In this document: positions 39,856 to 56,803 of the stretch, one piece after another | Layout: each line of letters starts with the position of its first letter | How positions within the stretch are numbered: position 1 is the stretch's first letter | Position numbers and translations under genes: made by a program | Assembly (NCBI GenBank): GCA_009103225.1 | Contig: RHPI01000193.1 | Span: forward strand, 216,294-280,293 | From: Chlorokybus atmophyticus | Taxonomy: Eukaryota > Plantae > Mesostigma and Chlorokybus algae | DNA: 64,000 nucleotides | Reading direction: 5' to 3' | Notes under the pieces: model-generated | Told to the model about the DNA's origin: nothing | Database searches by the model: none | What the model saw: only the letters and a program-made list of their open reading frames with translations

Positions 39856-41000
39856 TCAGAACGCTGAATATAACAATGGGGTTATGATGTCATGGACGAC
39901 ACGCAGGGAGTTCCCGTAAACCAACGAGTAAGGAAAACAATGCGGCCGGTCGATGCCGGCCGCGGCGTCAATAGCTTCTGACGCCACGCAATATTTGGCG
40001 GGCTTAAAGAGGCCAGCCGGGCGTAGAGACCGCCTCTTTGCGGGACTCGCCTGCGCAAGGCCTCCGGCCACCAACACACCACACTCAACACACGCACTCG
40101 CCCGCTCACAAACACATGTTCGCACAGCAGCATACCCCTTTCGCACACTCCCTCTTGTCCTGATGGAGTCTCTGATACGGGGTGATCCTTGGAACATCCT
40201 GCTGTGCAAGCAAGCAGCAACCTGGGTGGCCAATGCAGCAGCGAGTTGAATCTCTATTGGGCTCTCGACACGCAGGTGGGGATAGTGACCGCATGAAGCT
40301 GTAGTGCACTGAGCAGTCCACCAGCGCACAGTAGCATGCTAATTGCAAGCGTAAGAGTGAGAACGCTAACACTGTACATGTGCGCGGCACGTGTGTCTAT
40401 CGTATGCAGAATGCAACACATGTGTGTGGGTGTGTTCATGTGCAGTGTGCACATGTGTGCGCGAGTGCAATTGTGTGTGGATGAAAGCAATTGAGCTAGT
40501 CACAGTGCATATGACTACATCGCAATTCGTGCCTAATGACACCATTGGAACTCAGTCCGTGCACTGGCACCCCTATTTTCATTGCAGTGCTAATCACGTT
40601 TTACAACTCTCCCAAGTTCACGATCAATAACTCTCTTGGGCGGGCGCCAGCGTGCAACACATACGATATGCCAGGAGAGGGCACATCAACATTTACGGGT
40701 GGCTTTGAACAGAAACGGTAGGCTGCGATCCAATAGTTTAGTGCAATGACCCCTCTTTCATTCCAAAAGCACCGTAGTGCAAGCTAACTCTCAAAGTAAC
40801 AGTCAGACACCCAAGTTCCATCCTCGCTCCTTTCCTCCCCAGGCATGGTTGTTTGCAAGTGAAACAGCACCTTACCATGTTGTCTTTGTTGTCACCATCC
40901 TTGTCATCCTCGTTGTAACTGTGATCCTGCTTGACAGCGACAACCATGTGCATGTCGCCTTCAAGCTGGCCTTCTTCTTGCAAGCACGCACATGCACTGC
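39856..41000 (-). pseudogene. Unidentified decayed multi-exon gene
   Basis: AG/GT-bounded EEGQLEGDMHMVVAVKQDHSYNEDD (40876-40977), a segment with an in-frame TAA near 40600, and further exon-like frames. Family not recognised. Confidence 0.3.
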
Positions 41001-41914
41001 TTGTGACCATGTATGGCCACATCCGATATGTGCACGTGCACATGCATATAATACGTGAAGGCGTGTGCGCCATACATGGTGATCAATGGTGTTGACTGCC
41101 AGCAAGCCTGTCTGAGACACATACTACGTGTAGCCTCTTAAGTTGAAGTTATGAGGCTACACACAAATCGCAATGAGCGTACTTGCACTATGTATGTCGT
41201 GCCTTACCAATCAAGCAAGCATTAGGCAACTGCTTTTATGTCCGCGTAATGTTTCATGTTAAGGCATGACTTGGCACTTTTTAAGGCAGTTGGGGGACGC
41301 TTCCTCCCCCAACTTTAAGCTTTGGGCGTCTGTTCAAATTGCACGCACACACGCACGCACGCCTCTTGCATGATATGAGCACAAGTGACATCTACAATTT
41401 CAAAAAATCAATCACGTGCACCTGACTTGCATACACAGCCACAGTGCCAGCAAAGCTCACACACATACGGTATACAAGGGCGTGCATGCGTGCGGAAAGG
41501 TAAGCAGAGGCAAAGTGCAGAGGTATGGGAGAAGGAAAGTGGGACAGCCTGCGGTACGAGGGGTGTGAGTTCAGCTCTTGACAAGTGGGACGGGCAGTGT
41601 TGTGGCGTGCTGAGCCCCCCGCACCTTCTAATGCCCCTGTTGCTGCTGCCACCCCTCTGTCACAACAACAACACAAGCCTGCCTCGGCAGCTATGGTTAA
41701 TAGACAGCGCGTGTCGACCATGGAGGTTGGGCAGTACACTGCACAAGTGTCATGCACACCTCTGCAATCAGCAGAGGCAGGATCAGTCATCCCAATTAGC
41801 TACATCACACATTGCTATGCATTGATGGCATGTGTATATCTGACTCAGCATGTTCAACATAGTCTGCTCTGTAGCAAATATGCTGCAACAGTCCGCATAG
41901 AATAACAGCATTCA

Positions 41915-44900
41915 ATCACAAAGAGAACACATCACAGTCATGACCGACACTTTGCTGATCGATACGGGCCATGAAACGGTTGCCTCGCCGTCAGCGCCGC
42001 TGCACGTCAAAGGGCCTAGCGGCAAGCATCACGTCCACATTGCGCTCAACATTGGCGAGCACACGCAACTCCGTCACTGACACCACCTAAGGTACACATA
42101 AGATACGATCGCCATGATGATTGTGGTGTTGATGGTGTACATGATGAGGATGGAAGAGAGCGCATGCACAAGATGGTATCCACCTCAATAAGGATTTGGA
42201 AGGTGGCGGCTCCGCTGCGTTCCAAGCTGTGACTTCTTCTTGTCCCAACGTTGTCGTGCAGCCACATTGCCCACAGTAACAGCCTACAAGTTCAGTCAAT
42301 GAGTGGTCAACGAGATCGAGGGAATGCATACGCAAAAGCTTGTCAAGTACACACTCGTCGTAACTGGCTCAATGCATCAGCAACATACTCCCTCGGCATG
42401 CATGACTACAGCAACCTGATGTGCAATCCTGATCGGCATACTCGTGAAATGAACTGAATCACATGTGTACGATTGCTATGGTGCCCTGCACTGCTACAGG
42501 AACATACGCCAACAACCTGCGCAGTGCATGAACTGATGCAATCATCTCTTTCTCAGTATAATACGCACCTGAGGCCTCAACACAGGGTTCTTCAGCAGTC
42601 CAGACATGGAAAGTCTGTGCGCGGGCGCCACCATCGCAACGCCCCTCTGCGCAATCGTCTGAACTGCCTGCACTTCCCACTTGTTGCTGATTTCATCAAC
42701 AACGATGACCTGCAAGAAAGGTTCAACGATGAAGACAGTTGAAGATCCACTTGCGTGCTGGCATGCAGGAGCAAAGGTGTATGCATAGCAAGTTTGTTGC
42801 TGTTGTTGTTTCCTCCCACCTGAGGATTGTGGTTCTGTACAGCTCTATAAGGACATCATGCTGCAGCTGTCTGTCTCACAGGCATGCGTCGCGCTCGTCT
42901 TATGCAAGGGTGAGGTTCTTCCCCCGCGCCTGTTGAAGGAATGTATTGGCTCATGATGTGACCACACATACACGCACACACACATGCACCCGCACGCATG
43001 CGCGTGCACGCGCACACAACATCATCAGCGGCATGTGCCCAACAAGCAACCAACACATGTACCTGCAATCTCATTGGTCGTATCCACAACCATGACTCGC
43101 AGGCGCAAGGTCTCGGCTGTGATGCGCGCAACAACATCACGCAGCAGTGTTGTTTTGCCCACACCTGCGTGCTGATAACAGTCACATAACTCAACATTGC
43201 TTTCATGTTCATGCATCTCAATTCATGTGACAATATTCATGGTAGTACCTGGGGCTCTCAGCACAAGTATTGATCTTGGCATAGCACCAAGAGCAAGGCT
43301 CTGAGAGGTGGGCATAAGGCGGCTGATGAAGTCTATGATAATCTCCGCAGCACCGTGTATGTGTCGCCCTATGCGATATGTCAAGCCTTGAATCTGCATC
43401 TGCAATCGTTTCAGCAACGCACTTTTGTTAGACTCATTTGCAGCAGTGTGGTACCTTTTCAAGCCCTTGGATGGCTGATATGCGGTGCAGTGTGCCTGAC
43501 ACTCCAGCCCTATTTGCATTAGACAAGCGCACGCTATGGGATTGCAATGCTGCCACGGCCTCATCAACGCGCACGTCGTAATGCAGCTCATCCTCGCTGC
43601 CATCTGGTCACACATAAAGCTTTCTTTTTTAAATCAATGGTTGCCAACAATGCCACACCCACACCCTTACACGCACACACGCATGCGCGCACACACGCAC
43701 ATGTAGCAAGCCGCCTTGCCTGCCATGCGAAGTGCGGGACGGACCTGCCAATGTCCAGAACCACTTCCACCGCTGCGCTCGAAACCCGTGCAGCAGCCTC
43801 CACAACAGCTTCCGACACCCAGCAACATACACATCAACACGGTTGTAATAACACCTTCCATGCATAACCACATTCACAACACCAACACCAACTCTCTGTA
43901 CACAGCAACAGGCAGTAGGCAAAGACAGAGGTAAACTCTTACCCTAAGCACAGGAGGCAGCACTTGTAGCAAGCTGGCTACTTCTGGTGACTCTGAATGA
44001 GTCTCCTTCACATTCGCTTCAACATTGCTGCTAGTTGATGATGAGATGAACTCCCCTGATGTGGTCTGATACACTGCTGCAAAGGTCTCATTGAAGGTGA
44101 GTAACAAGTCTATGCCAGGAGGCGCGCACATGGCCGATGGCACGGCACTCGCAATCGCTGTCGGGTTGGTGCGTGCAGTGGTTTCATCAATGACACGTTG
44201 AGCGCAAGCCGTTATGAAGTCATCTTCCATGCGCTCAAATCAAGCAAGGAGGTGCCTCACATCGGCCGCTGCGTACGCTTTCTGCATGTCGGTGAGCGGG
44301 CGCTTGTCCCACGTGGAGTGGTCTATCGCCTTGTGGGTTAATCGGATCAGGTTGTGCATCTTTAACAGACTGCTGAGGCTCTTGCTTTGCAGCTGTGCTT
44401 GCTGTGAGCACACAAGTAAGCAACGGTTACACCATGCCCATCATATAAGTACACACAAAGCTTGCATTTTGCAATGCACACAGTGCAATATGTATAGTGT
44501 GTAGGGTGTGGTTGTCTGCTGGATGAGATTAACAGATGCGTACCTCATTGCTTAGCTGATAAAGGACCTTAGTGTCCACAACGTTGCGCATGCTGATGCC
44601 AAACTGCTGGTGCAATGCTGCAGCATGTGACCTTGCATCATGACACACCTGCAGTCAGTCACAGCGAGGTGTTGAGCACGCATGTTGCAGAGTTGAGTTG
44701 AGAGTGCACATGTTCACCTTGAGAATGTGATCGCTCTCCAACAACCAACGAAGTACTTACAGAACATTTCCAACGGATTGTGCCGCGATCAGGTCAAAGA
44801 GGTAGATCGTTTGCACACTGGAGTCAACATCGGTTGCAACCTGCGCATGGCATCAGGCAACATGTGGGCAGCACTCGCAGTGGCCACTACAGTCAGGCGC

Positions 44901-45910
44901 CTACAGTTGAGTGTACATATATACGACCGCTGTGTGCACACGTGTGTGTGCGTGCCTGCGTGCATACGCGATCGCATGTGCTTTTTCTACCAATGTATTT
45001 GATTGCACATGTCTGTAGGTGTGCATACACGCGCATACACGCGCGCGCGCACGTGTGCATACACACTCACACGCATGCATGCCAACTGTCATCCACTACA
45101 GCACGCACCTGTAGCAGACACGTCCGGCCACCTTTGTCCAAGTCTCTGCCTTTGCAAGCAACCGCAACCTCCAAAGACCTCTCAAGCCATTTGCAGGCAG
45201 AGTCACATCACCTTATCATCGCTGTCTATCAGCACCACGCGCGGCTCAGATGGTGATGAAGGCAGTGGTGGTAGCAGTGATGGTGGCTCCAGCATCACGG
45301 AAGAATTTGCTGCTTGTGACTCATTTGCTTCACCGTGCTTAGCATACAGCTGAAGCAACCTCCTTGCTGAGTGTAAAAACATGCTCAAGTCTTCTACCGA
45401 AAGGTTACGCGACTGCAGCAAAAGTTGTTCCAACGCGGCTGCTGCGGCTGCTTGCTTGGCTTTGTTTGCTTTGCGAGCGTGGCCGACGCCAATTATGAGC
45501 TGCATTCGTGCAGCGGTGGTTTTGGGTTTAAGTACAGCTGTGGCCGAATGCGTGTATGGTTGAGTGCTGCTGTCTTGCATTGTGATGATGTCTACGCGTT
45601 GGTCCTGGCCCTCAAACACACGTAGAAGCATAAGAGGAGTGCATGCTTGGCTCTTCCCACCTTTCTGCACAAGCAATGAGTTGTCAACATTATCTCTCAT
45701 GTGTAAGTTAACATGGCAGGGCGCCTTACCCAACTGAGCTGCTGCATCAAGAATGCCGCACGCGGGAAGTCGCGCCAAGACCTGGGCTCGTTGTCTAGCG
45801 CTGAGTTGTCTCGCAGGTGTACATTATCAGTAGCCATGTGCATGAGCTTCAATGCCTCACTGGCTTTAAGCAGCAGTTGTGAAATCTTGTTGCCAAGCTT
45901 GGCACCTGCT
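41915..45910 (-). pseudogene. Copy A: dsRBD-like domain + inactive DEDDy-type 3'-5' exonuclease + SpoIIIAA/Ycf45-like P-loop ATPase, multiply disabled
   Basis: GVGHARKANKAKQAAAAAALEQL; VAVACKG...CLLQV; HDARSH; YAAADV; NRAGVSGTLHRISAI; GVGKTTLLRD; DTTNEIAG; VIVVDEIS. Frameshifts near 45210 and 42875, premature TGA at 41991-41993. Confidence 0.88.
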
Positions 45911-48738
45911 GAAATGGGCAAGTGCTGTTGAGCACATTATTACTTGCGTGAACAAGAGTAGTAACGATGGCGACAGCTGTGCGTATAAGGGCATCACGTG
46001 TGTATGCATAAGCGTGTGTCTGTACATGTGCGTGCACAAGCGTGCGCTTGCATGTGCTTGCATTTGCTCAAGGGCGATTGGCATCAAAAAGGTGATCCAG
46101 AGCATGCGTAGTGAAATGCAACTGAATGTGTGCATGAATGCGCCCAATTGCACCGCTGTGCTGCTCACAACTTCGCTCCTTTATAGCAGTTTGCATGCAT
46201 AAGCAGCTGTTAAGTGAACAATTGATGCAAGTCAGCAACACACGTACCAACCACGCTTTTTCAACCCACAAACCTGTTCCACAGCAGCAGTCCGTTTAAC
46301 ATTGACAGCTGGCCTCCACCACCCTCAGAATCACAAGGGTAGGGCGCCAGCGGTGTACATTGACAGCGCTCTCCATTTTGTTGCATCCATCCAAGCTTCT
46401 TGGCTGATCAGCAACCGTTGCACCCATCCAAGCTCAAGCTCAAGCTGGCACAAGCTCTCACAGCAAGACACAAGTTGCCCGCCTTTTCCTCCCGAGCTTG
46501 CCGGCGAGTAAGGCAGCACCTTGCCGCTGGTCACCCTCGCCATCGTCGCCGCCGTCGTCGTCTCTGTCCGAGCTTGCCTACTCCGCCCAAGACTGCCGCC
46601 TCCCAACCCTTCAGCAAGCATGCCACTGGTTGCTTGCATTGTCAGTGGTCAAGCTTATGTGCTCGAGCTTAAGCTTCAAGTTGCTTCAGCTTGAGCTGGC
46701 GCTTACTAACACTGATCCAGCAGCAGACAGCAAGCTTGAGCTGAAGCAGACTGAGCGCCCGTTTGAATATTGGTTTGATGTTGCATCATCATCTTCAGCA
46801 GCAGCAGCTATGTTGCAGCGATCCTGTGAAGCTTATGCTGGTGCTGTCTTACTTGCAGGCAAGCATGCGGGGTTGGGAGGCGAGGGAGAGCAGGGAACTG
46901 TAGTTGTGTCTTAGTCGGCAAGCTGGAGCGTGAGTTTTGCACTGAGGGGCTTATTGAATAAAGAGTGGTCATTGCACTCAACTAGCAGCCTACCCCTGTT
47001 GTTGGAAGTCAGCTATCTGTTGTTAACTTGACCTCTCCCGGCAAACTGGTGGTTATGTATGTGTTGGACGCTGCCGTCAACACGGAAATGTTGTTAGTGG
47101 ACAGCACAAGTAAGACGTGGGCACGAGATGTGAGTTGAGGTAATCTTTTTGACCCACACATACACACCCATTGCGCATGCACGCGCGCACACTGTGCACA
47201 TGCATGCACACGCACACGCACACGCACACGCACACACACGTGCATTGAGTGCTGTCTGCATACCACGACAGACAAATGTGCTGGGCTAACCAGTGCACAT
47301 TACTACAGCTAAAGCCCAATCCAAATTTGGTTTTCTACATGTCCCACTGTTGCAGCATCTGGTGGTGCGTTTAACAGGTTTACCAACGTGAGACCATACC
47401 CATTAACGCGCAATCTGCGAAGGACAAGAAACACTCATGTTCTTGCTACTACACATGTTCGCGTTCATCCGTGCACGCACGCAGCCTGTCGGCTGCAGTC
47501 GAGCCTGCAAGAACTCGCACATGCAAATTGGAGCACGCAATTGGCAGCAGCTGGGGTGGAGTTGCAGCAAAACCGAGCCAGAAGAATTTGAAAATAACTC
47601 CTTTCTAACTTGCCTGATAAAGAAAGGGCTGCAACAGTGATGTGTGTGCGCATGTGCGCTTGTAGTTCTGGACTGTGTAGTAGAAGAACGTTGGCAGGCG
47701 TCCCATGCTTCCCCCCTATGGCGCACATGGTAGCTTGATGCATGTGTGTGCGTGTGTGTGCGTGCTCGCGCACGCTTATGCGCTTGTGTGCATGCGCACG
47801 TATGCGCATGTGGCTGTGCATGCGCTCATGTGCATATGTATCTGCGCGCGTGTGTATCGAAAATGTCAAGGATAAAGTGTACACACAATGCGCTACGTCG
47901 TTGCTCATGCATAGTGTCATTCATCACGCATGCATCGGAACAGCACGCAGTCCGCACTTACTCTCCTATATATTCCACCATCGGGCTATACTACAATACG
48001 TACATTACTACCTACACCACCACCCCGTTAGTCATGCAAGTTATACATGCATCACAATGTAACCTGCAGCAAGCAAGCAAGCATGAGTCGCAGCGTCAGT
48101 ACTGGTAGGCCGACAGCAGTATTTGCGCGCGCGAGCATGCAGCGTGTGAATGTGTTCTGCTTGCCCTTGCGAAGTCTACATGCCTGCCTCCCCTTTGCCC
48201 CACTACATGCGCCTAGGTAGAGCACAGAGACATAGGTTGTGCCTTAATTGATTTGCTTGTGAGCGTGTTGCTGTATATAAGGGGTATGGTACGGTGTGTG
48301 CCTGTGCGTGCGTAAGCGCAGGCGTGTGTGTGGCAATGCAAAAGTTAATGCGCACACGCACAGATAGCACTCAGCACACTGCACCCAGCACTTGTGTGTA
48401 CAGCAAATGCAAGTGATCATGATACATGCAACATGCATGACACATGCCTTGTTCACCAAGCTCATCATCATGCAATGATTATTTACCACGTAACTATCGT
48501 AACTACTGCCTTCAACCCCCATCAGACATACATGCATGCATTTGCTCATTACCTGTACACAAGGCGTCGTGTGTTTAGTGCATATGTCACATTGGTCAGC
48601 CTGTATAGAACACCAATACCAGCAAAGCTCACACGCAGAGTTAAATGCAGTCAGCTCTATAGCAAACATGCTGCAGCCTTGAACAACATTACCGTCCATT
48701 CACATAGAAAAACCATCATAGCCATGACTGACGCTGCG

Positions 48739-51700
48739 CTAATCAACACGAGCCATGAAGAGGTTGCCTGTCCGCCAGCGCCGCTGCACGTCAAAGGGCC
48801 TCCCGGCAAGCATAGCATCCACATTGCGCTCAACATTGGCGTGCACACGCAACTCTGTCGGCGACACCACCTGAGGCACATACCAAAAGCCATTGTCTTA
48901 AAAATTGTGGTGATGATGGTGTCCATGATAAGGATTGGCAAGCGATTGCACAGAGATAGTATCCACCTCAATAAGTACTTGAAACGTGGCAGCTCCGCTG
49001 CGTTCCAAGTGTGACTTCTTGTTGTCCCAACGATGTCGTGCAGCCACATCACCCACCGTAACAGCCTGCAAGTTCACTTCAAGAGTGGTCACTAAGAGTA
49101 GGTGGAATGCATACGCTCAAGTCCCTCAAATGCACACCCACTATGGCTTAATGCATCAGCAACACACTGAGCCTCAGTGCTTGACTACAAGGAACTGTTG
49201 TGCAATCCCTAAGGTGATTTGAACTGCTAAAGGAGTATAGCGCAAACAACCCGCGCAGTGTGTGGACCGATGCATGTAAAGTCGCAGCATTGCACACCTG
49301 CACACCCCCAACAAGAGGCCTCAACACAGGGTTTTTGAGCAGTCCCGATAAGGAGAGCCCGTGCGCTGTCGCAACCATTGCAATACCCCTCGGTGCAATC
49401 GTTTGCACAGCCTGCACTTCCATGTTGTTGCTGATCTCATCAACGAGAATAACCTGCCACAAAGATTGAAAGAGACAATGAGGTCATTGGAAAAAATCTA
49501 GTTGTGCACGCTTATGCGCAAGAGCAAAAGGTGTGCGCGGGAAGTTGTTGTTGACCTGTGGATTGTGGTTTTGTACGGCTTCAAGGAGGACGTCATGCTG
49601 CAGCTTTCTGTCTATCACAGGCATGCGGCGGGCTCGTCCAATGCAAGGGTGGGGTTCCTCCCCTGCACCTGATGAGGAAAGATGTGGGCTCATGATGTGA
49701 CCACACACGCACGCTTTCAAGCACGTTCTTCCCCTGCATCTGTTAAGGAAAACTGTTGGCTCATGATGTGAGCACGCACACACGCATGCATGCATGCACG
49801 GAGACACACACGCCCGCATGCACAACATCATCATCCGGGACATGTGCCCAACAACCAACCATCCAACGTCTGTACCTGCAATCTCGTTGGTCGTGTCCAC
49901 AACAACGACTCGTAGCGACAAGGTCTCGGATGTGATGCGTGCAATGTCACGCAGCAGTGTAGTTTTGCCCACACCTGCACAATAATATAAGTCACATGAC
50001 TCATTATTGTATTCAGCATATGTTAGTCCCAGTGACAAAAGTACCTGGGGCTCCTAGCAGAAGTATTGATCTTAGCATAGCATCAGGAGCAAGGCTCTGA
50101 GAGGTGGGCATAAGACGGCTTGTGAAGTCCATGATGATTCCCGCGGTACCATGCACGTGTCGCCCAATGCGGTATGTTAAGCCTTCGATCTGCATTGCAA
50201 CCATCTGAGTATTGACATTGGTTAAATGTCAGGCACAATAGCAGCAATGTGATACCTTTTCAAACCCTTGTATAGCTGATATGCGGTGCAGTGTGCCTGA
50301 CACTCCAGCCCTGTTTGCACTCGAGAAGCGCACGCCATGGCATTCCCACGCTACAACAGCATCATCAACGCGCACGTCATGACGAAGCTGATCCTCGCAG
50401 CCATCTGATTGGCCGGACACAAAGAGCTAAGTGTGAAGGTTGTAAATAAAAGTTGCCCTGCCTAACACATTCATACACGCGCGCACACACGCAGGTGCAA
50501 GTGCACGAAGACGCACACATGCGCGCATGTAGCGTGCAAAGGCATGCATATATGCAGCAAGGTACTTTGCCTGCCATGCGAAGCACGGGACGTCTGCCAA
50601 CGTCCAGAACCACTTCACCAACCAAAACGCTAAAAGCCCGTGCAGCAGCCTCAGCCACAGCCTCCTACATCGAGCAACATACACAACACATTAGCACAGT
50701 ACAGTAAGTTAACACAGTAAGTAAGCACCAGAAGTAGTGAAGTACAAACATATTAAATCTCACCTTCAGCACGGCAGGCAGGACTTGTAGCAAGCTCGCC
50801 AACTCTGGTGACTCTGAGTTGGTCTCCTTCACATCGTTTGATTCAGCATCGCTGCCTGTCATTGATGAGTTGCACTCCCTTGGTGCAGTCTTATACACCG
50901 CTGCATAGGACTCATTAAAAGTAAGCAGCAAGTCTATGCCAGGAGGCGCACGCACGGCGCTCAAGTTTGCTTCCGGGCTGATGAGTGCGGTGCTTTTATC
51001 AATGACACGCCAAGCACAAGCGTCTATGTAGCTCTCTTCCATGCGCCTGTGTAACACAAGGAGGTGCCTCACATCGGCCGCTGCGCACTCTTTCTGCGCA
51101 TTGGTGAGTGGGCGCTTGTCCCACGTTGAGTGGTGTATCGCCCCCTCGTGTGGGTTGATGGGGAGATTGTGCATCTTCAACAAACTGCTGAGGCTCTTGC
51201 TTTGCACTTGCGCTTGCTGTCAACACACGGATCATCACTACTTGCACTGCCCGCAAACGCTACAGACATGCCATGCCATGCCATGTACAGACAACTGCAG
51301 TAGTACAACGCAACATGTGTAGTAGGGGTAGGGGGGGGGGATCAAGTTGGTGTGCTGACCCTTGGCCAGACCTCATTGCTTAGCTGGTAGGACTTGGAGG
51401 TCCACAACAGTGCGCATGGTGATTCCAAACTGCTGGTGCAATGCTGCAGCATAAGGCCTTGCATCATGCAACACCTGCGGTCAGTCACAGCGAGGTGTTG
51501 TGCATGCCCGATGCAGATTTGGCACGAGAGTGCACATGTTCACCTTCAGAATGTGTTCGCTCTCCGACAACCAGCGAAGCACGTCCACAATTCTTCCAGA
51601 GTGTGCAGCGATCAGATCAAAGAGGTAGACCCTTTGCGCACTGGAGTCAACATCAGTGGCAACCTGCGCACGGCATGATATGTAGACAGCGCTCTTGCAG

Positions 51701-52691
51701 TTGCCGCTGCAGTTAGTGCATACAGTTGAGTGCCCCGAGTTTGAAGTGCACGCATGCACGCGTGGGTTTTCCTTGTGGTGTCGGAGTGCCTTCGTCTGTA
51801 TGGGTGTGGCTGTGTGTCCGTGTAAACGTGAACACTGCAAGCACTCGCGCAAGCGAGTGCGCATGCGTGTGTGCATGCATGCGTGCCAACTGTCACCAAC
51901 TACAGCACGCACCTGTATAAGACACGCCCGGCCGGCTGTTGAGTTTATGCCTTTGCAACTGACTGCAACCTCCACAGATCTCTCGAGCCATTTGCAGGCA
52001 GGGTCACATTCGGACCCATCGCTGTCAATCAGCACCACGCACGGCTCAGATGGTGATGGTAGCGATGATGATGGCAGTGATGGCTCCAGCATCTTGGGGA
52101 AGTTTGCTGCTTGTGTCCCATTGACTTCAGCGTGCTTAGCATATAGCTTAAGCACCTTCCTTGCCGGCTTGGTAAAGGTGCTTAGGTCTTTTGCTGAAAA
52201 GTTGTGCGACTGCAGCAAGAGTTGTTCCAACGCGGATGCAGCGGCCGCTTGCTTGGCTTTGCTTGCCTTGCTAGCCCTGCCAATGCCAGTTATGGGTTGC
52301 ATTCGTGGTTGTGTTGTTTTGGGTTTGAGTGTAGCCGTGGCCGTCTGCGTACTGTTGTTTGGTGTCACAACGATCTCCACGCGTAGGTTTCCGCCTTTGA
52401 ACAAGTTTAGCAGCGAAAGAGGAATGTCATTTTTGCCCCCAGTGTTCTGCACAAACAACAACGAGTCATGAGCTGTGTCTCATGTCCAAGACAACAGTAT
52501 GGGGGAACTTACTAACATGAGGTGCTGCATCACCAATGCCAAACGCGGGAAGTCCAGCCAGGAGTCAGGATCGTTGTCAGGTGCAGAGTTATCCCGCAGG
52601 GGTGCACTGCCGGTAGCCATGCGCGCACTAGCTGTGGTCTCTCAAACTGGCTGTGATCAGCAAGTGACCTTGCTGCTCAGCTTGGCACCTG
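48739..52691 (-). pseudogene. Copy B: same dsRBD/exonuclease-like/SpoIIIAA ATPase architecture, less damaged
   Basis: GIGRASKASKAKQAAAASALEQL; VAVSCKG; YLFD; HDARPY; CAAADV; EVVLDVGRRP; LLGAP|GVGKTTLLRDIAR; IGRARRMPV; VDEIS; VATAHG; ERSGAATF. Stop at 48739-48741. One 2-nt deletion near 51388 relative to copy A. Upstream exon has in-frame stops before an ATG at 52620. Confidence 0.85.
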
Positions 52692-53899
52692 CTGGGAGAA
52701 AATGGGCAAGTGCATTGAGTGCACTCTTTGCAGGCATAAGTGTAGCAACTTGTGTAGCCAAGCTGTGCATTTGGGTGCATGTGTCTACTACGCCGTAAGC
52801 AGCCAGCCTTCAGTCCTTAGCGTGCGAGTATTTTCGTGCTTGTGAGCTTGTGTCTATGTGCATGTGTGCAAGATGCTTGTGTGTGTATACACATGCGTGT
52901 TTGTGAACATGTATGCACGAGCGTGCGCTTGCATGTGTACGAGCGGTTTGCTACAAAGCTTTAGACCAGGCACGCGGTCCAATGCGTACCTGGCAACTAA
53001 TAAGCCACACATGCACCGTTGGTGCTACTCGCAGCCAGTCGACGGCAGCGTGCAACATCATACGTAAACCACCTTTCCCCAACCCACAATTCTGTGCCAC
53101 AACAGCAGTAAGTAAGTCATTATCAACAGCTGGCCACCGCCCTCAATAACAAGGGAAGGGTGCTAGCTGTGTCGATTGACAGCTCTCCAGTCCGCTTTGT
53201 CCAAGCTTCGGTAGCGACCCCGCCGATGCAAGTTCAAGCGCAACCCGCAACGCAGACGAGCATAGCAGCAACGTGAAGGCTGATGTGTACAACATGCAAG
53301 CAGCAGCTTTGGCGTATCATGTACGCAACAGCAGCATATGCGCTTACCCGGCGTCCTATGTACGCAGGCACGAAGGTGTCACATCATGTAGGCGGCCCGG
53401 CGGTGTCTGTCTGCGTGATGTACATCTTCGTGTTCAACGAAGCTTGGTGACGTGACTGGTGGACGCCGCTGACTCAGCGGCGCTGAGAGGTGTGATGTCA
53501 CGCCGCCTCTGTCCATCCCAGCTCACCGGGGTTTTGCATGGCGCTGGTGAAGGCGGCGGTGGCGGCCAACTTGGTTGACATGTGGTGAGAACGATGAGGT
53601 GTTCAGCTGTTTGACTTGAGCAAAGGAGAAGGTGAACACCTTTGCGGCTGTTGGGCTACCGCGCTGAGTACCGCAGAAGGTGCTCTCGATTTCACCTGCC
53701 TTGATTTGACTGACTGGCAGCGATGTACGCCGTTGAGCTGCTGCCATGTTTGTGATGCTGGCTCTACATGGAGTAAAAAGGATGTGTTTCGCATCCGGCT
53801 TACACTTTTTGATGCGAGCATAAGTAGTGATTATTGTCGGCATCATTTCACTCACCCAGCAGCATGCATGTTGAGGCAAGCATCTTACTTCTGTCTTGA

Positions 53900-56803
53900 A
53901 CAGTTGCAGCTTCACCACGAGGTCACTGAAGCTCAGGCTTTCTGGCTGCCAGTTAAACATGGGAGGAGGAGGACTTGGGGAGTGTAGTGACACCATGGAG
54001 CAGACGTTTGTGCAGCAAGCGTCCCAACCCAATGGCAATGCAGCCGGTAAGAGTTTGACCCGGTCTCACTCTCCTACTGACTGGCCAAGCCAGTCAATCT
54101 GTCACGGCTCAGTAAACCAAGCCAACAAGCACTGCCTGAAACAGGTTGACAACACTGACTGAGTGCATGCAGTCACTGCAGGTGAGGGGGTCAACAGCGC
54201 TAGCAACACTCAAGGCAGCATTGCGGAGCTTAGGGAAGAGATGCGCAAACACATGGCTGAAAGCAATGCAAAAATCCAGGTTATACACTCTCAGATATAA
54301 CAATGTTGTCTGTAAACATGCAAATGTAAGAGCACACTACACCTGGCTGCCCGCACAAGGCTTGATGCCATGTTGCCTGTGCCAGGAGTTGGAGAACCGA
54401 GTTCAGCTGTTGCAAGTGCGCAGCCATATTTCTGGCCAACACAACTCCAAAGACGCTTGCATACTGGAGAGCATCAAGCTGTTAGTGAGCTCACTGCAGA
54501 TGCCAGAGCAGCAGTCCGCCACAGTTGTATCCGCTCCTGCATCCAGCCAAGAGGTGCCCTGGAATCCGAGCCCTGCGAAACCTGGAGGCTTGGATGCACG
54601 AGACCCGACATACTCAAGGCCAACAGTCAATCTGACTTCCTCTGAAGCTGAGGCAATCGTGGAGAACAAGATCATTGAGGTAAGAGGAGCCAGCAACTAT
54701 GCATCGTGTGCACTGATGCACGCTTGCATGTTGTTTGCTGTGGATGCGATGGTTGGTGCTTGGGCTCGTCTGGTGTGACAGCCTGCTTTGCCAGTTTGCG
54801 ATGTACCTCTCTGGCAGCAAGAGTTGCTACTATTGAGCCAAACACAACGTCAGCGCTGCCGATCTGATAAGCATTGTATTGACTTGTAGCCGAGCGTGCA
54901 AGCGAGTGTCAACTTGCCGGCGATGATAGTGCCAAAGGAGGTGACGCTAGCGCTATCACCTGCGTCATCGGACACGACAACGCCGTTGAACGCTACCCCT
55001 GTGGCATTGGCGGCTTCCGACGGTGTGGATGCATCAGGCGAACAGTCTGAGCCATCCAGCACGTCAGCTCCTGTCGCTGATGACGGACACCGTTCAGTGA
55101 AGGGCAACTTACTTACTTCAGTGGCACGGTCAGTGAAGCCAGCAGCAAGCAATCCCGCACCTGTACTCACAAGGGTCAACAGCGGCAACAACAATGGACG
55201 CTACAGTAATGGCGAATGAGGTCATCTTACCAGACGCAGCCTTGCTGACGGTTGCCGCAAGCAAGCACTCAGCCCAACAAGTTGTGGTGCAAGACACTCA
55301 ACAACCTGCGAGTTTACCAGAAGAGATTCTTTCATCTGTAGTTGGAGGGTTATTGCGTGCACCCGCATCATGCGACGTACTTGCTGTCTGGTTGACTACA
55401 AACCTGCAGGAGCTCAACCTGACTGGTAGGCGCCTGACTGAGCTGCCTCCGCAAATTGTACAGCTCAAAAACCTTCGAGTGCTCAATCTGGCAAAGAATT
55501 TCTTATGTCGGTGGCCACCTCAGATTGACACTCTGAGCAGTCTGCAACAACTTGATGTCCGCGACAATGACTTGGATGTGCTGCCTCCGCAGATCGGGCA
55601 GCTTACAAACCTTCGAGTGCTCAATTTGGAAAAAAAACCGGTTGTCTCGGTTGCCGCCTCAGATTGGAGACTTAAGCAGTCTGCAACAGCTTCTTTTTCG
55701 CGAGAATCACCTGACAGAGCTACCAGACCAAGTTGGGCAGCTCACAAAGCTTCGTATGCTCAGTTTGAGAAAGAACCGGTTGTCCCAGCTGCCACCTCAG
55801 ATTGGTCATCTACGCAGCCTGCAACATATTGATGTCGGTGACAACAAGCTGACAGAGCTACCGCAGACTTGGCAGTTCACAAACCTTCAAGTGCTCAAAC
55901 TAGACAACAATAGGTTGTCGCGGTTGCCGCTCCAGATTGGAAGTCTGAGGAGTCTGCAACAGCTTGATGTCCGCTACAACAAGCTGACAGAGCTACCCAG
56001 TGAAATGGGGCAGCTGCAGGATTTGCGAGAGTTTGATTGTGCTTACAACCAGCTGCGCTTGTTGCCGCGCGAGATTGAGGGGTTGACTTACTTGCGACAC
56101 CTTGATCTCCGCGGGAACAATCTGAGCTATGTGCCAGCCAATATTGGAAAGCTTGCCAAGCTCAAGACGCTGGTACTCGCCTGGAACGGAGTCAAGAAGG
56201 TGCCAAGCGAGATAGGGCGACTGACAGATCTGGAAGTGCTTGACCTCAGTAGAAACGGATTGACAGAGTTGCCAAGGGCGATTGGCCAGCTGAAACGCCT
56301 GCGAGCGTTGAGTGTTCCCAAACAACAAGCTGACTACCCTGCCAAGCGAGATCAGGCAGCTAACAGCACTGCGAAAGCTTGATCTTGCTGGTAATCAAAT
56401 AAAGGTGCTGTCAAGCGACATTGGCCACCTGAGAAGCCTGCAAGAGTTGGACGTTGGGGGCAACCTGCTGACTACTTTGCCAAGCAAGATTGGGCAGCTT
56501 CACAGCCTGCAAACATTGCATATCTCACGCAACTGTCTACGAACACTACCATATGACATGGGAGGCCTTTCTCGTCTTGAGAACCTGTACTGCAGGTCTA
56601 CAAGTTTGACGAGTATTGAACTGGGTTTCGACCATCTGACACGGCTGCGAAAACTGGACCTGAGTGACAATATGCTGCAAGAGCTCCCAGAAACATTGGC
56701 ATATCCCAACAACCTAGTCCTGCTGGACATAACCGGCAACCCTATTATGGCATCAGACAAAGAGTACTTGCGACGGTTATACACCTCTGCCCTCATAGTC
56801 TAA
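53900..56803 (+). pseudogene. LRR protein: coiled-coil/low-complexity N-terminal exons plus ~20 LRRs of 23 aa in one exon; frameshifted
   Basis: Repeats of LxxLPxxIGxLxxLxxLxLxxNx across ORFs 55194-55832, 55552-56382 and 56312-56803. +1 shifts at the A8 run (55630-55637) and at CCCAAACAACAAG (~56318), and a probable third near 55200. IAELREEMRKHMAESNAKIQ|ELENRVQLLQ is coiled-coil-like. Confidence 0.85.

What the first reader, a model, noticed from the sequence alone, without database searches (positions are those of the whole stretch)
41915..53200. Tandem pair of dsRBD + catalytically dead 3'-5' exonuclease + SpoIIIAA/Ycf45 ATPase genes
Seen: both copies have a dsRBD-like C-terminal helix (G.G.A.KA.KAKQAAA..ALEQL), an Egalitarian/EXD-like exonuclease fold and a complete SpoIIIAA-type ATPase. 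ExoI DxE is replaced in both (VAVACKG at 45148-45168, VAVSCKG at 51949-51969), and the ExoII Asp is His or Tyr. Only the ExoIII Asp remains, while surrounding residues are conserved. Established: inactive DEDDy folds act as RNA-binding adaptors (EXD1, Exuperantia), and plant Ycf45-like proteins such as SPD1 lack these domains. Inference: the shared substitutions predate duplication, implying a selected dsRNA-binding, non-nucleolytic sensor coupled to an NTPase, possibly for RNA surveillance or defence. Homology extends to the upstream regions (46290-46450 vs 53125-53240).
Basis: partly seen in the sequence, partly recalled or inferred. Interest (0 to 1): 0.75.

Follow-up and report, generated by a model that had tools for sequence, protein, structure and literature searches.

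The report
Dead-exonuclease ATPase gene plus decayed duplicate
The alga Chlorokybus carries a gene that joins a double-stranded-RNA-binding-like domain, a catalytically dead RNA-trimming fold and a bacterial-type ATP motor, next to a decayed duplicate of itself; related proteins with a live nuclease exist in other eukaryotes but none has been studied, so its role is still a guess.

Summary
The window is nuclear DNA of the streptophyte alga Chlorokybus atmophyticus. The minus-strand tandem duplicate (about 41.9-46.4 kb and 48.6-53.2 kb) does encode a dsRBD-like domain, an Egalitarian/EXD-type exonuclease fold and a SpoIIIAA-family (PilT-class) ATPase.

The two copies are not equivalent:
- Copy 2 gives a 13-exon, 767-aa open frame that keeps every family-invariant ATPase residue. 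Its one blemish is a 2-nt deletion at the end of exon C, which only an upstream cryptic donor bypasses.
- Copy 1 is a decayed pseudogene, with at least 4 in-frame stops, at least 4 frameshifts, 3 lost splice sites and a lost P-loop glycine.

The catalytic set D-E-D-Y-D reads A-K-H-Y-D in copy 1 and S-K-Y-C-D in copy 2. An intact relative (P0122, 855 aa) has the same exonuclease-ATPase layout and keeps DEDDy. An ESM Atlas cluster of 60 eukaryotic proteins carries the same fusion.

Selection kept the dead-nuclease form long after duplication. dN/dS is 0.37 for the exonuclease and 0.26 for the ATPase, exons are more alike than introns, and copy 2 has no stops (P<0.0005 under neutrality).

Verdict: a pseudonuclease branch of an uncharacterised but already catalogued exonuclease-ATPase family. 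"Sensor/defence" is speculation. The scan met this family before in this genome (s1-079128).

The parts
48739..52620 (-). Copy 2: 13-exon gene model, 767 aa. Exons: 52620-52513, 52446-51913, 51663-51544, 51474-51394, 51216-50764, 50664-50566, 50426-50256, 50189-50045, 49974-49876, 49662-49556, 49453-49298, 49065-48967, 48870-48739.
   Evidence: All junctions are GT-AG, and the joined frame is open from ATG 52620 to TAG 48741-48739. The JGI model P0002 (Chrsp99S09292, 400 aa) covers only exon D from Met 51174 through exon J.
52189..52446 (-). dsRBD-like domain of copy 2 (first part of exon A)
   Evidence: Pfam dsrm E 0.0066, 17.4 bits, below the cut-off of 23. The AF2 model has alpha-beta-beta-beta-alpha topology at pLDDT 59.5. 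Foldseek top hits are almost all dsRBDs, E 5e-3 to 1e-1. 27 of 30 ESM Atlas look-alike clusters are dsrm.
51025..52020 (-). Exonuclease-like (DEDDy-fold) domain of copy 2, spread over exons A-D. ExoI S-C-K lies within 51949-51969, the ExoII Tyr at 51451-51453, the ExoIII Cys at 51085-51087 and the ExoIII Asp at 51073-51075.
   Evidence: Alignment with P0122, P0238, P0239 and P0240; blastp; RNase D model hit on P0002 residues 15-65, E 1.8e-6.
51370..51393 (-). Lesion in copy 2: the 22 nt after the donor used in my model. In copy 1 the homologous 24 nt are coding (VLYQLSNE, matching VVFALIQE of P0122). Copy 2 lacks 2 nt here, which gives an in-frame TGA at 51373-51375 before the ancestral donor at 51371-51370.
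   Evidence: The open frame survives only if the upstream donor CAA|GTCCTA (51394|51393) is used.
48739..50664 (-). SpoIIIAA-family ATPase of copy 2 (exons E-L). Walker A lies at 50054-50045 plus 49974-49961, and Walker B (VILVDE) at 49453-49436.
   Evidence: Spore_III_AA 53.4 bits on P0002. All 40 family-invariant residues are kept. An AF2 model of P0002 (pLDDT 70) matches PilT, VirB11 and GspE traffic ATPases and the archaeal RuvB-like Holliday-junction helicase of entry 5F4H, E 1e-10 to 1e-7.
41955..45843 (-). Copy 1: pseudogene of the same structure. Lesions: +1 frameshift near 45210; TAA at 44757-44759; TGA at 44240-44242; exon E acceptor AG changed to CG and donor GT to GC; +2 frameshift near 43743; TGA at 43608-43610; exon I acceptor AG changed to GG; -2 and -1 frameshifts near 42877 and 42850; LVGGV lost at the end of exon J; +1 frameshift near 42227; TGA at 41991-41993; stop codon changed to CAG.
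   Evidence: Five of the 40 invariant ATPase residues are changed, including the first P-loop Gly (G273R, codon starting at 43258). The JGI model P0001 (Chrsp99S08511, 336 aa) starts right after the TGA and skips or mis-frames damaged exons.
45148..45168 (-). ExoI motif of copy 1 (VAVACKG). The ExoII His is at 44625-44627, the ExoIII Tyr at 44273-44275 and the ExoIII Asp at 44261-44263.
53053..53187 (-). Upstream (promoter or 5' UTR) segment of copy 2, homologous to 46233-46371 upstream of copy 1
   Evidence: blastn, 73% identity over 142 nt. The weak translated matches show no convincing coding signal.

Best explanation
A Chlorokybus-specific paralogue of a eukaryotic 'Egalitarian-like exonuclease + SpoIIIAA-family ATPase' protein lost its exonuclease chemistry. 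At least the ExoI Glu-to-Lys change came first. This paralogue carries a dsRBD-like domain at its N-terminus. It then duplicated in tandem (dS about 0.44).

Both copies were kept by purifying selection for most of the time since. Copy 1 then decayed, over roughly the last quarter of that time. Copy 2 is still, or was until very recently, a working 767-aa protein.

Inferred mechanism: the dsRBD-like domain and the dead DEDDy fold act as RNA-binding modules, the way Egalitarian, EXD1 and Exuperantia use that fold. They bring structured RNA to a PilT/VirB11-class, probably hexameric, ATPase that remodels, moves or assembles an RNA-protein complex.

Shown: the architecture, the dead catalytic residues, pseudogene status of copy 1, selection on copy 2, and family placement. 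Inferred: RNA binding, oligomeric state and the cellular role.
For: Organism and JGI models.

Gene model.

Collinear homology to P0122, which has an intact DEDDy exonuclease (Pfam 8e-23) plus Spore_III_AA: 36.6% identity over 650 aa, E 1.6e-100.

Catalytic residues.

Selection:
- Exons are 80.6% identical and introns 67.8%.
- pS 0.33 matches intron divergence. dN/dS is 0.37 overall, 0.37 for the exonuclease and 0.26 for the ATPase. All are below the 0.5 floor expected if copy 1 had been neutral from the start.
- Neutral simulation gives about 13 stops per 767 codons at d=0.22, with P(0)<1/2000. The 3 substitution stops of copy 1 fit d of about 0.05.
- Relative rate: 35 copy-1-specific against 13 copy-2-specific amino-acid changes, chi-square 10.1. 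Within the exonuclease it is 10 against 3.

Copy 2 keeps 40 of 40 invariant ATPase residues; copy 1 lost 5.

Other members of the ATPase family carry other nucleic-acid-binding modules: R3H, zf-CCHC, OST-HTH and a winged helix of the Egalitarian type (WH_Egal).

The ATPase model resembles PilT, VirB11 and GspE, and a Holliday-junction helicase of the same class.

Egalitarian's exonuclease domain binds RNA around the catalytic site, and its catalytic residues are dispensable for that binding; EXD1 and Exuperantia are inactive (preprint 10.1101/2025.08.03.668247).
Against: - Copy 2 has a 2-nt deletion in a stretch that was ancestrally coding. It is full-length only if a non-consensus upstream donor is used, which removes 8 residues of a core helix of the exonuclease fold.
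- The JGI annotation gives only ATPase-part models for both copies.
- No expression data could be consulted.
- The dsRBD call is below Pfam's threshold and rests on a low-confidence model.
- No member of this exonuclease-ATPase family has a tested function, so the RNA-handling mechanism is analogy only.
Confidence: 0.5

Rival explanations
1. Both copies are now pseudogenes. Copy 2 was inactivated recently by the 2-nt deletion in exon C, so the locus holds two relics of a formerly functional dead-exonuclease ATPase gene.
For: The deleted stretch is coding in copy 1 and aligns with P0122 (VLYQLSNE against VVFALIQE). The deletion puts a TGA in frame before the ancestral donor. The substitute donor CAA|GTCCTA is non-consensus. 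JGI did not predict a full-length protein.
Against: There is only one lesion in 2.3 kb, against more than 12 in copy 1. All 40 invariant ATPase residues are kept. Copy 2 evolves 2-3 times more slowly than copy 1. Other donors of this same gene also have A at -1 or C at +3, so the upstream donor is usable in principle.
Confidence: 0.25
2. Copy 2 makes only the ATPase part, as in JGI model P0002, from an internal start in exon D. The dsRBD-like and exonuclease-like exons are an untranslated relic.
For: JGI model P0002 starts at Met 51174, just downstream of the exon C lesion. Several family members have the linker motif and ATPase but no exonuclease domain (P0003, P0004, P0007).
Against: Exons 1 to C (281 codons) have no stop or frameshift apart from the terminal 2-nt deletion. 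About 4.8 stops are expected under neutrality, so the Poisson P(0) is about 0.009 (my scaling). Exonuclease exons B and C are as conserved as the ATPase exons, 83-84%. Copy 2 has 3 lineage-specific changes in the exonuclease against 10 in copy 1. P0002 is itself a poor model, since it lacks the last two conserved exons.
Confidence: 0.13
3. The catalytic substitutions are simply pseudogene decay of an ordinary active exonuclease-ATPase gene, and there was never a selected non-nucleolytic form.
For: The intact relative P0122 keeps DEDDy. Copy 1 is a pseudogene. Four of the five catalytic positions differ between the copies or from the consensus in ways reachable by one or two substitutions.
Against: The ExoI Lys codon AAA is shared by both copies. 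The exonuclease domain has a pairwise dN/dS of 0.37. Copy 2's frame is open over a divergence that should have produced about 13 stops. The domain was therefore conserved while already lacking a metal ligand.
Confidence: 0.07

Closest known systems
Eukaryotic exonuclease + SpoIIIAA-family ATPase fusion proteins: P0122 (855 aa, EukProt transcript GILJ01009407), and an ESM Atlas cluster of 60 eukaryotic members, mostly Oomycota. Uncharacterised.
   Same: The order is the same: DEDDy-fold domain, a conserved linker motif (P-x-G-phi-x-L-x-L-T-F...Y), then the ATPase. One HSP covers 650 aa at 36.6% identity.
   Different: P0122 keeps D-E-D-Y-D and has a weak OST-HTH/LOTUS match at its N-terminus. 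The Chlorokybus pair has A/S-K-H/Y-Y/C-D, a dsRBD-like N-terminus, and a stretch between ExoII and ExoIII that is about 30 residues shorter.
Egalitarian, EXD1 and Exuperantia: RNA-binding proteins built on a DEDDy fold
   Same: The exonuclease-like domain is of the Egalitarian/EXD type. The best non-fusion match is a mite Egalitarian-like protein, P0238, with WH_Egal x3 plus an exonuclease domain. EXD1 and fly Exuperantia also lack catalytic residues and act as RNA binders.
   Different: None of them carries an ATPase. Egalitarian itself keeps DEDDy. There is no SAM domain, and neither the Pfam scans of the exon ORFs nor the local alignment of paralogue P0003 to the window found a WH_Egal domain here.
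SpoIIIAA (Bacillus sporulation 'feeding tube' ATPase)
   Same: The Pfam family is the same (PF19568), and the fold is the PilT/VirB11-class P-loop ATPase fold.
   Different: TIGR02858 scores 85 bits against an equivalog cut-off of 281, so this is not an orthologue. It is a eukaryotic nuclear gene with no spoIIIA operon context.
Ycf45 and plant SPD1 (R3H-containing, plastid or cyanobacterial type)
   Same: Same ATPase family, also fused to a nucleic-acid-binding domain (R3H).
   Different: They form a separate clade: the plant SPD1-like protein groups with cyanobacterial and Chloroflexi R3H proteins at 100/100 support, while the Chlorokybus pair sits with P0003 among other eukaryotic members. 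The pair has no R3H tail and ends shortly after the conserved ERR-W motif.
PilT, VirB11 and GspE traffic ATPases, and the archaeal RuvB-like Holliday-junction helicase (PDB 5F4H)
   Same: These are the best structural matches to the ATPase model, Foldseek E 2e-10 to 1e-7. Entry 5F4H shows that this ATPase class can act on nucleic acids.
   Different: Sequence identity is only 12-18% and TM-scores about 0.3, because the model includes disordered linkers. No secretion or pilus partner genes are present.

Membership tests
DEDDy 3'-5' exonuclease (DnaQ-like fold, Pfam PF01612; Egalitarian/EXD type) | Sequence homology across the Exo I-II-III segments | tested here: met
   blastp of the copy-2 model: P0122 E 1.6e-100, P0238 E 1e-12, EXD1-like P0239 and P0240 E about 1e-7. 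All three motifs align. RNase D model on P0002, E 1.8e-6. Single exons give only a weak Pfam hit, E 0.023.
DEDDy 3'-5' exonuclease (DnaQ-like fold, Pfam PF01612; Egalitarian/EXD type) | Catalytic residues D-x-E (ExoI), D (ExoII), Y-x3-D (ExoIII) | tested here: not met
   Copy 1 reads A-x-K, H, Y-x3-D. Copy 2 reads S-x-K, Y, C-x3-D. These are fold members but not catalytic members, that is, pseudonucleases.
dsRBD (Pfam PF00035) | Profile match at the curated threshold | tested here: not met
   17.4 bits, E 0.0066, against a cut-off of 23. PDB sequence searches found no dsRBD.
dsRBD (Pfam PF00035) | Alpha-beta-beta-beta-alpha fold resembling solved dsRBDs | tested here: inconclusive
   The AF2 topology is right, but pLDDT is 59.5 and the alignment has only 2 sequences. 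Foldseek top hits are DHX9, Loqs, DCL4, MLE, Staufen and TRBP dsRBDs, TM 0.5-0.65, E no better than 4.6e-3. ESM features give 27 of 30 dsrm clusters.
dsRBD (Pfam PF00035) | dsRNA binding | not testable with these tools
   A Lys-rich start of helix 2 (K-A-S-K-A-K-Q) is present. No His-containing beta1-beta2 loop is seen by eye in the translation.
SpoIIIAA/Ycf45 ATPase family (Pfam PF19568) | Profile match above the gathering score, with intact Walker A and B | tested here: met
   Copy 2 (P0002): 53.4 bits against 27; G-A-P-G-V-G-K-T and V-D-E are intact; 40 of 40 invariant residues kept. Copy 1 fails: P-loop G273R and 4 other invariant residues lost, plus frameshifts.
SpoIIIAA proper (TIGR02858 equivalog) | Equivalog score cut-off | tested here: not met
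   85 bits against a cut-off of 281.3.
Plastid/cyanobacterial Ycf45-SPD1 clade | Clade membership and the R3H C-terminal extension | tested here: not met
   The tree places the pair with P0003 and other eukaryotic members. The SPD1-like and R3H bacterial clade is separate, at 100/100 support. Copy 2 ends 20 residues after the ERNVD...RRW motif, with no R3H.
Eukaryotic exonuclease-ATPase fusion family (P0122 type) | Collinear exonuclease domain, linker motif and ATPase in one polypeptide | tested here: met
   Single HSP, copy 2 residues 188-762 against P0122 195-818. This depends on my spliced model of copy 2.
Unprocessed pseudogene (copy 1) | Multiple in-frame stops, frameshifts and lost splice sites relative to an intact paralogue, with introns retained | tested here: met
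   Faster amino-acid evolution than copy 2.

The most novel reading that the evidence does not exclude
Copy 2 is a working dsRNA-recognising pseudonuclease coupled to a hexameric PilT-class ATPase. On this reading it is a previously undescribed kind of eukaryotic RNA-handling machine, for example one that senses structured or viral RNA and remodels or sequesters it. It would be one branch of a family in which the same ATPase is repeatedly wired to different nucleic-acid-binding heads (R3H, zinc knuckle, LOTUS or winged helix, active exonuclease, dsRBD).
Probability: 0.12. Interest if true: 0.7.

Novelty: new variant of a known kind. Interest (0 to 1): 0.42.

Why it matters
The SpoIIIAA/Ycf45 ATPase family has tested roles only in sporulation (SpoIIIAA) and in plastid development (plant SPD1, from my own knowledge of the literature). 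This locus, with its relatives, shows a separate eukaryotic branch in which the ATPase is fused to Egalitarian-type RNA-binding modules.

In Chlorokybus the nuclease chemistry was lost, yet the fold stayed under selection. That is the signature of a nuclease turned RNA adaptor. It gives a natural separation-of-function pair for anyone who wants to learn what the exonuclease-ATPase family does: an active form (P0122, and reportedly a 1,075-aa paralogue in this genome) against a dead form (copy 2).

On its own the locus is modest: one gene of unknown function and one pseudogene, both mis-annotated as short ATPase-only proteins.

Tried and rejected
- The one full-library HMMER search used exon D of copy 2 (ExoIII, linker and start of the ATPase). 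It found only copy 1's JGI model, so this stretch is too lineage-specific to trace the family.
The word-based search is limited by query length, and a search with the exonuclease region of P0122 returned only 4 proteins. A look-up of our findings by sequence with P0003 was blank.
- The look-up of encoding contigs has no record of P0001.
- The species behind the accession GILJ01 could not be traced in papers or in cluster records.
- PDB sequence searches with the dsRBD region gave only chance hits.
- Literature searches for Ycf45/SpoIIIAA/R3H found nothing on an exonuclease fusion.
- Rejected: copy 1's lesions as assembly errors (three are base substitutions to stop codons); the two copies as haplotypes (20-32% divergence); membership of the plastid Ycf45 clade.
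- The joined 767-aa model has no reference, so it was not handed to the database-search, family-scan or folding tools. Those were run exon by exon by reference, or on the JGI models P0001 and P0002. The joined model was used only in local scripts built from window coordinates.

Full report
**What the DNA is**

The window is intron-rich eukaryotic DNA with about 51% GC and no tRNAs. An HMMER search of 1.84 billion representative proteins with one exon returned a single hit, P0001. That protein is EukProt/JGI protein Chrsp99S08511 of Chlorokybus atmophyticus. The neighbouring model Chrsp99S09292 (P0002) and a paralogue, Chrsp94S08259 (P0003), came up in the word-based search. I take no contig here for human.

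**The observation**

Two minus-strand segments, 41861-45925 and 48649-52713, align at about 72% identity through exons and introns. Weaker homology continues upstream, 46233-46371 against 53053-53187. Pfam on single exon ORFs gave only hints: dsrm at E 0.013 and 0.04, DNA_pol_A_exo1 at 0.023, and Spore_III_AA at 2.5e-5. I therefore built gene models.

**Gene model of copy 2**

I used the JGI models as exact-match guides, junction sequences, three-frame views and the paralogue P0003 for the last exons. Copy 2 resolves into 13 GT-AG exons (52620 down to 48739) with an open 767-codon frame. The JGI model P0002 (400 aa) covers only Met 51174 to exon J and misses the last two conserved exons.

There is one caveat. 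In copy 1, exon C runs 24 nt further to a GAG|GTACGC donor and encodes VLYQLSNE. This aligns with VVFALIQE after the DTQ of the intact relative P0122. Copy 2 lacks 2 nt in this stretch, which puts TGA (51373-51375) in frame before that donor. My open frame uses the upstream donor CAA|GTCCTA (51394|51393).

The joined model has no reference. It was therefore used only in local scripts. Remote searches and folds were done exon by exon, or on P0001 and P0002.

**Copy 1 is a pseudogene**

Aligned codon by codon to copy 2, copy 1 shows these lesions:
- a +1 frameshift near 45210;
- TAA at 44757-44759;
- TGA at 44240-44242;
- exon E acceptor AG changed to CG, and its donor GT changed to GC;
- a +2 frameshift near 43743;
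- TGA at 43608-43610;
- exon I acceptor AG changed to GG;
- -2 and -1 frameshifts near 42877 and 42850;
- loss of the conserved LVGGV at the end of exon J;
- a +1 frameshift near 42227;
- TGA at 41991-41993;
- a lost stop codon.

It has also changed 5 of the 40 residues that are invariant across 24 family members, including the first P-loop glycine. Copy 2 keeps all 40. The JGI model P0001 starts just after the TGA in exon D and threads around the damage.

**Domains**

- *ATPase.* Spore_III_AA scores 53 bits against a cut-off of 27 on P0002. TIGR02858 scores only 85 against an equivalog cut-off of 281, so this is a family member but not a SpoIIIAA orthologue. An AF2 model of P0002 with 24 aligned sequences (pLDDT 70; above 80 in the P-loop core) matches PilT, PilU, DotB, VirB11, GspE and FlaI, and the archaeal RuvB-like Holliday-junction helicase 5F4H.
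- *Exonuclease.* The copy-2 model gives one HSP with P0122 over residues 188-762 (36.6% identity, E 1.6e-100). It also matches a mite Egalitarian-like protein (P0238, E 1e-12) and EXD1-like proteins (E about 1e-7). P0122 has a solid PF01612 domain (8e-23), Spore_III_AA, and a weak OST-HTH match. The RNase D model hits the ExoIII part of P0002.
- *Catalytic residues*. Relatives read AVDCEG, HDCRxD and YAxxD. Copy 1 reads AVACKG, HDARSH and YAAAD. Copy 2 reads AVSCKG, HDARPY and CAAAD.
- *dsRBD.* Pfam is below threshold, at 17.4 bits. The AF2 topology is alpha-beta-beta-beta-alpha at pLDDT 59.5. Foldseek top hits are nearly all dsRBDs, with E no better than 4.6e-3. 27 of 30 ESM look-alike clusters are dsrm. 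I rate the dsRBD call at about 0.8.

**Selection**

- Exons are 80.6% identical and introns 67.8%.
- Nei-Gojobori pS is 0.33, about equal to intron divergence. dN/dS is 0.37 overall, 0.52 for exon 1 plus the dsRBD, 0.79 for the linker, 0.37 for the exonuclease, 0.35 for the exonuclease-ATPase linker and 0.26 for the ATPase.
- If copy 1 had been neutral since the duplication, the pairwise value could not fall below 0.5. Both copies were therefore constrained for a long time, including the exonuclease domain.
- A neutral simulation at d=0.22 per lineage gives about 13 stops in 767 codons, with P(0)<1/2000. Copy 2 has none. The three substitution stops of copy 1 fit about 0.05 substitutions per site of neutral time.
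- With outgroups, copy 1 has 35 private amino-acid changes against 13 for copy 2 (chi-square 10.1). The split is 10 against 3 in the exonuclease and 25 against 11 in the ATPase. The tree gives terminal branches of 0.21 and 0.11.

**Order of events**

The ExoI Lys is AAA in both copies, so the Glu-to-Lys change most simply predates the duplication. The other catalytic positions differ between the copies: GCT against AGT, CAT against TAT, and TAC against TGC. They kept drifting, as expected once chemistry is gone.

**Family context**

The pair is sister to P0003 (support 100/99). It lies among eukaryotic members: P0122, amoebozoans such as Balamuthia, Nolandella, Vermistella and Paradermamoeba, and green algae. 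The plant SPD1-like protein groups with cyanobacterial and Chloroflexi R3H proteins in a separate clade (100/100).

An ESM Atlas cluster of 60 eukaryotic proteins, commonest in Oomycota, carries Spore_III_AA (97% of members) together with DNA_pol_A_exo1 (70%). The exonuclease-ATPase fusion is therefore already in databases, though I found no paper on it.

Across the family the ATPase is joined to different nucleic-acid-binding modules: R3H, zf-CCHC (P0014), OST-HTH (P0122), WH_Egal (P0003), and the dsRBD-like domain here.

I could not fetch it.

**Mechanism (inference)**

Egalitarian binds a stem-loop RNA around the DEDDy site, and its catalytic residues are dispensable for that binding. EXD1 and Exuperantia are inactive RNA binders. 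By analogy, the dsRBD-like domain plus the dead fold of copy 2 would hold structured RNA, and the PilT-class ATPase would do mechanical work on it.

Nothing here speaks for or against a defence role. An LRR gene lies about 2.5 kb upstream on the other strand, which is a weak hint at most.

**Verdict**

This is a pseudonuclease variant of an uncharacterised but catalogued family, with one live or recently dead copy and one clear pseudogene.

Noticed in passing
window 39911-40070 (+): A U12 minor-spliceosomal snRNA gene: Rfam RF00007, 66 bits against a gathering score of 53, full length. It lies about 1.9 kb beyond the 3' end of copy 1.
   Followed up: no
window 55194-56382 (+): ORFs with strong leucine-rich-repeat matches (LRR_14 at 4e-42, LRR_8 at 2e-34). 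This is an LRR gene about 2.5 kb upstream of copy 2 on the opposite strand.
   Followed up: no
window 40645-40871 and 46840-47076: An inverted repeat of about 240 nt at 68% identity brackets copy 1. It may be a transposon remnant or linked to the duplication.
   Followed up: no
copy 2 residues about 373-390 (window about 50890-50945, minus strand); also P0122, P0003, P0004, P0007, P0014, P0123: A short conserved motif (P-x-G/R-phi-x-L-x-L/F-S/T-F-D/N/E...P-x-Y) lies upstream of the ATPase in all eukaryotic members seen, whether or not they have an exonuclease domain. It matches no Pfam family.
   Followed up: partly
JGI models P0001 (Chrsp99S08511), P0002 (Chrsp99S09292), P0003 (Chrsp94S08259): The public gene models look truncated or mis-spliced. 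P0001 threads a wrong frame through exon E. P0002 lacks the N-terminal 295 residues and the last two exons. P0003 lacks the conserved GLTYRIGR segment and may hide a longer gene.
   Followed up: partly
P0136 (Chlamydomonas reinhardtii XP_001691436): This 382-aa model contains the same C-terminal ATPase segment of about 80 residues twice, which suggests a mis-assembled or mis-predicted gene.
   Followed up: no
introns of both copies, e.g. window 47000-47300 and 49700-49850: CA/TG-rich, microsatellite-like stretches read as runs of Val-Cys or His-Thr in mechanical ORFs. They inflate the ORF list.
   Followed up: no
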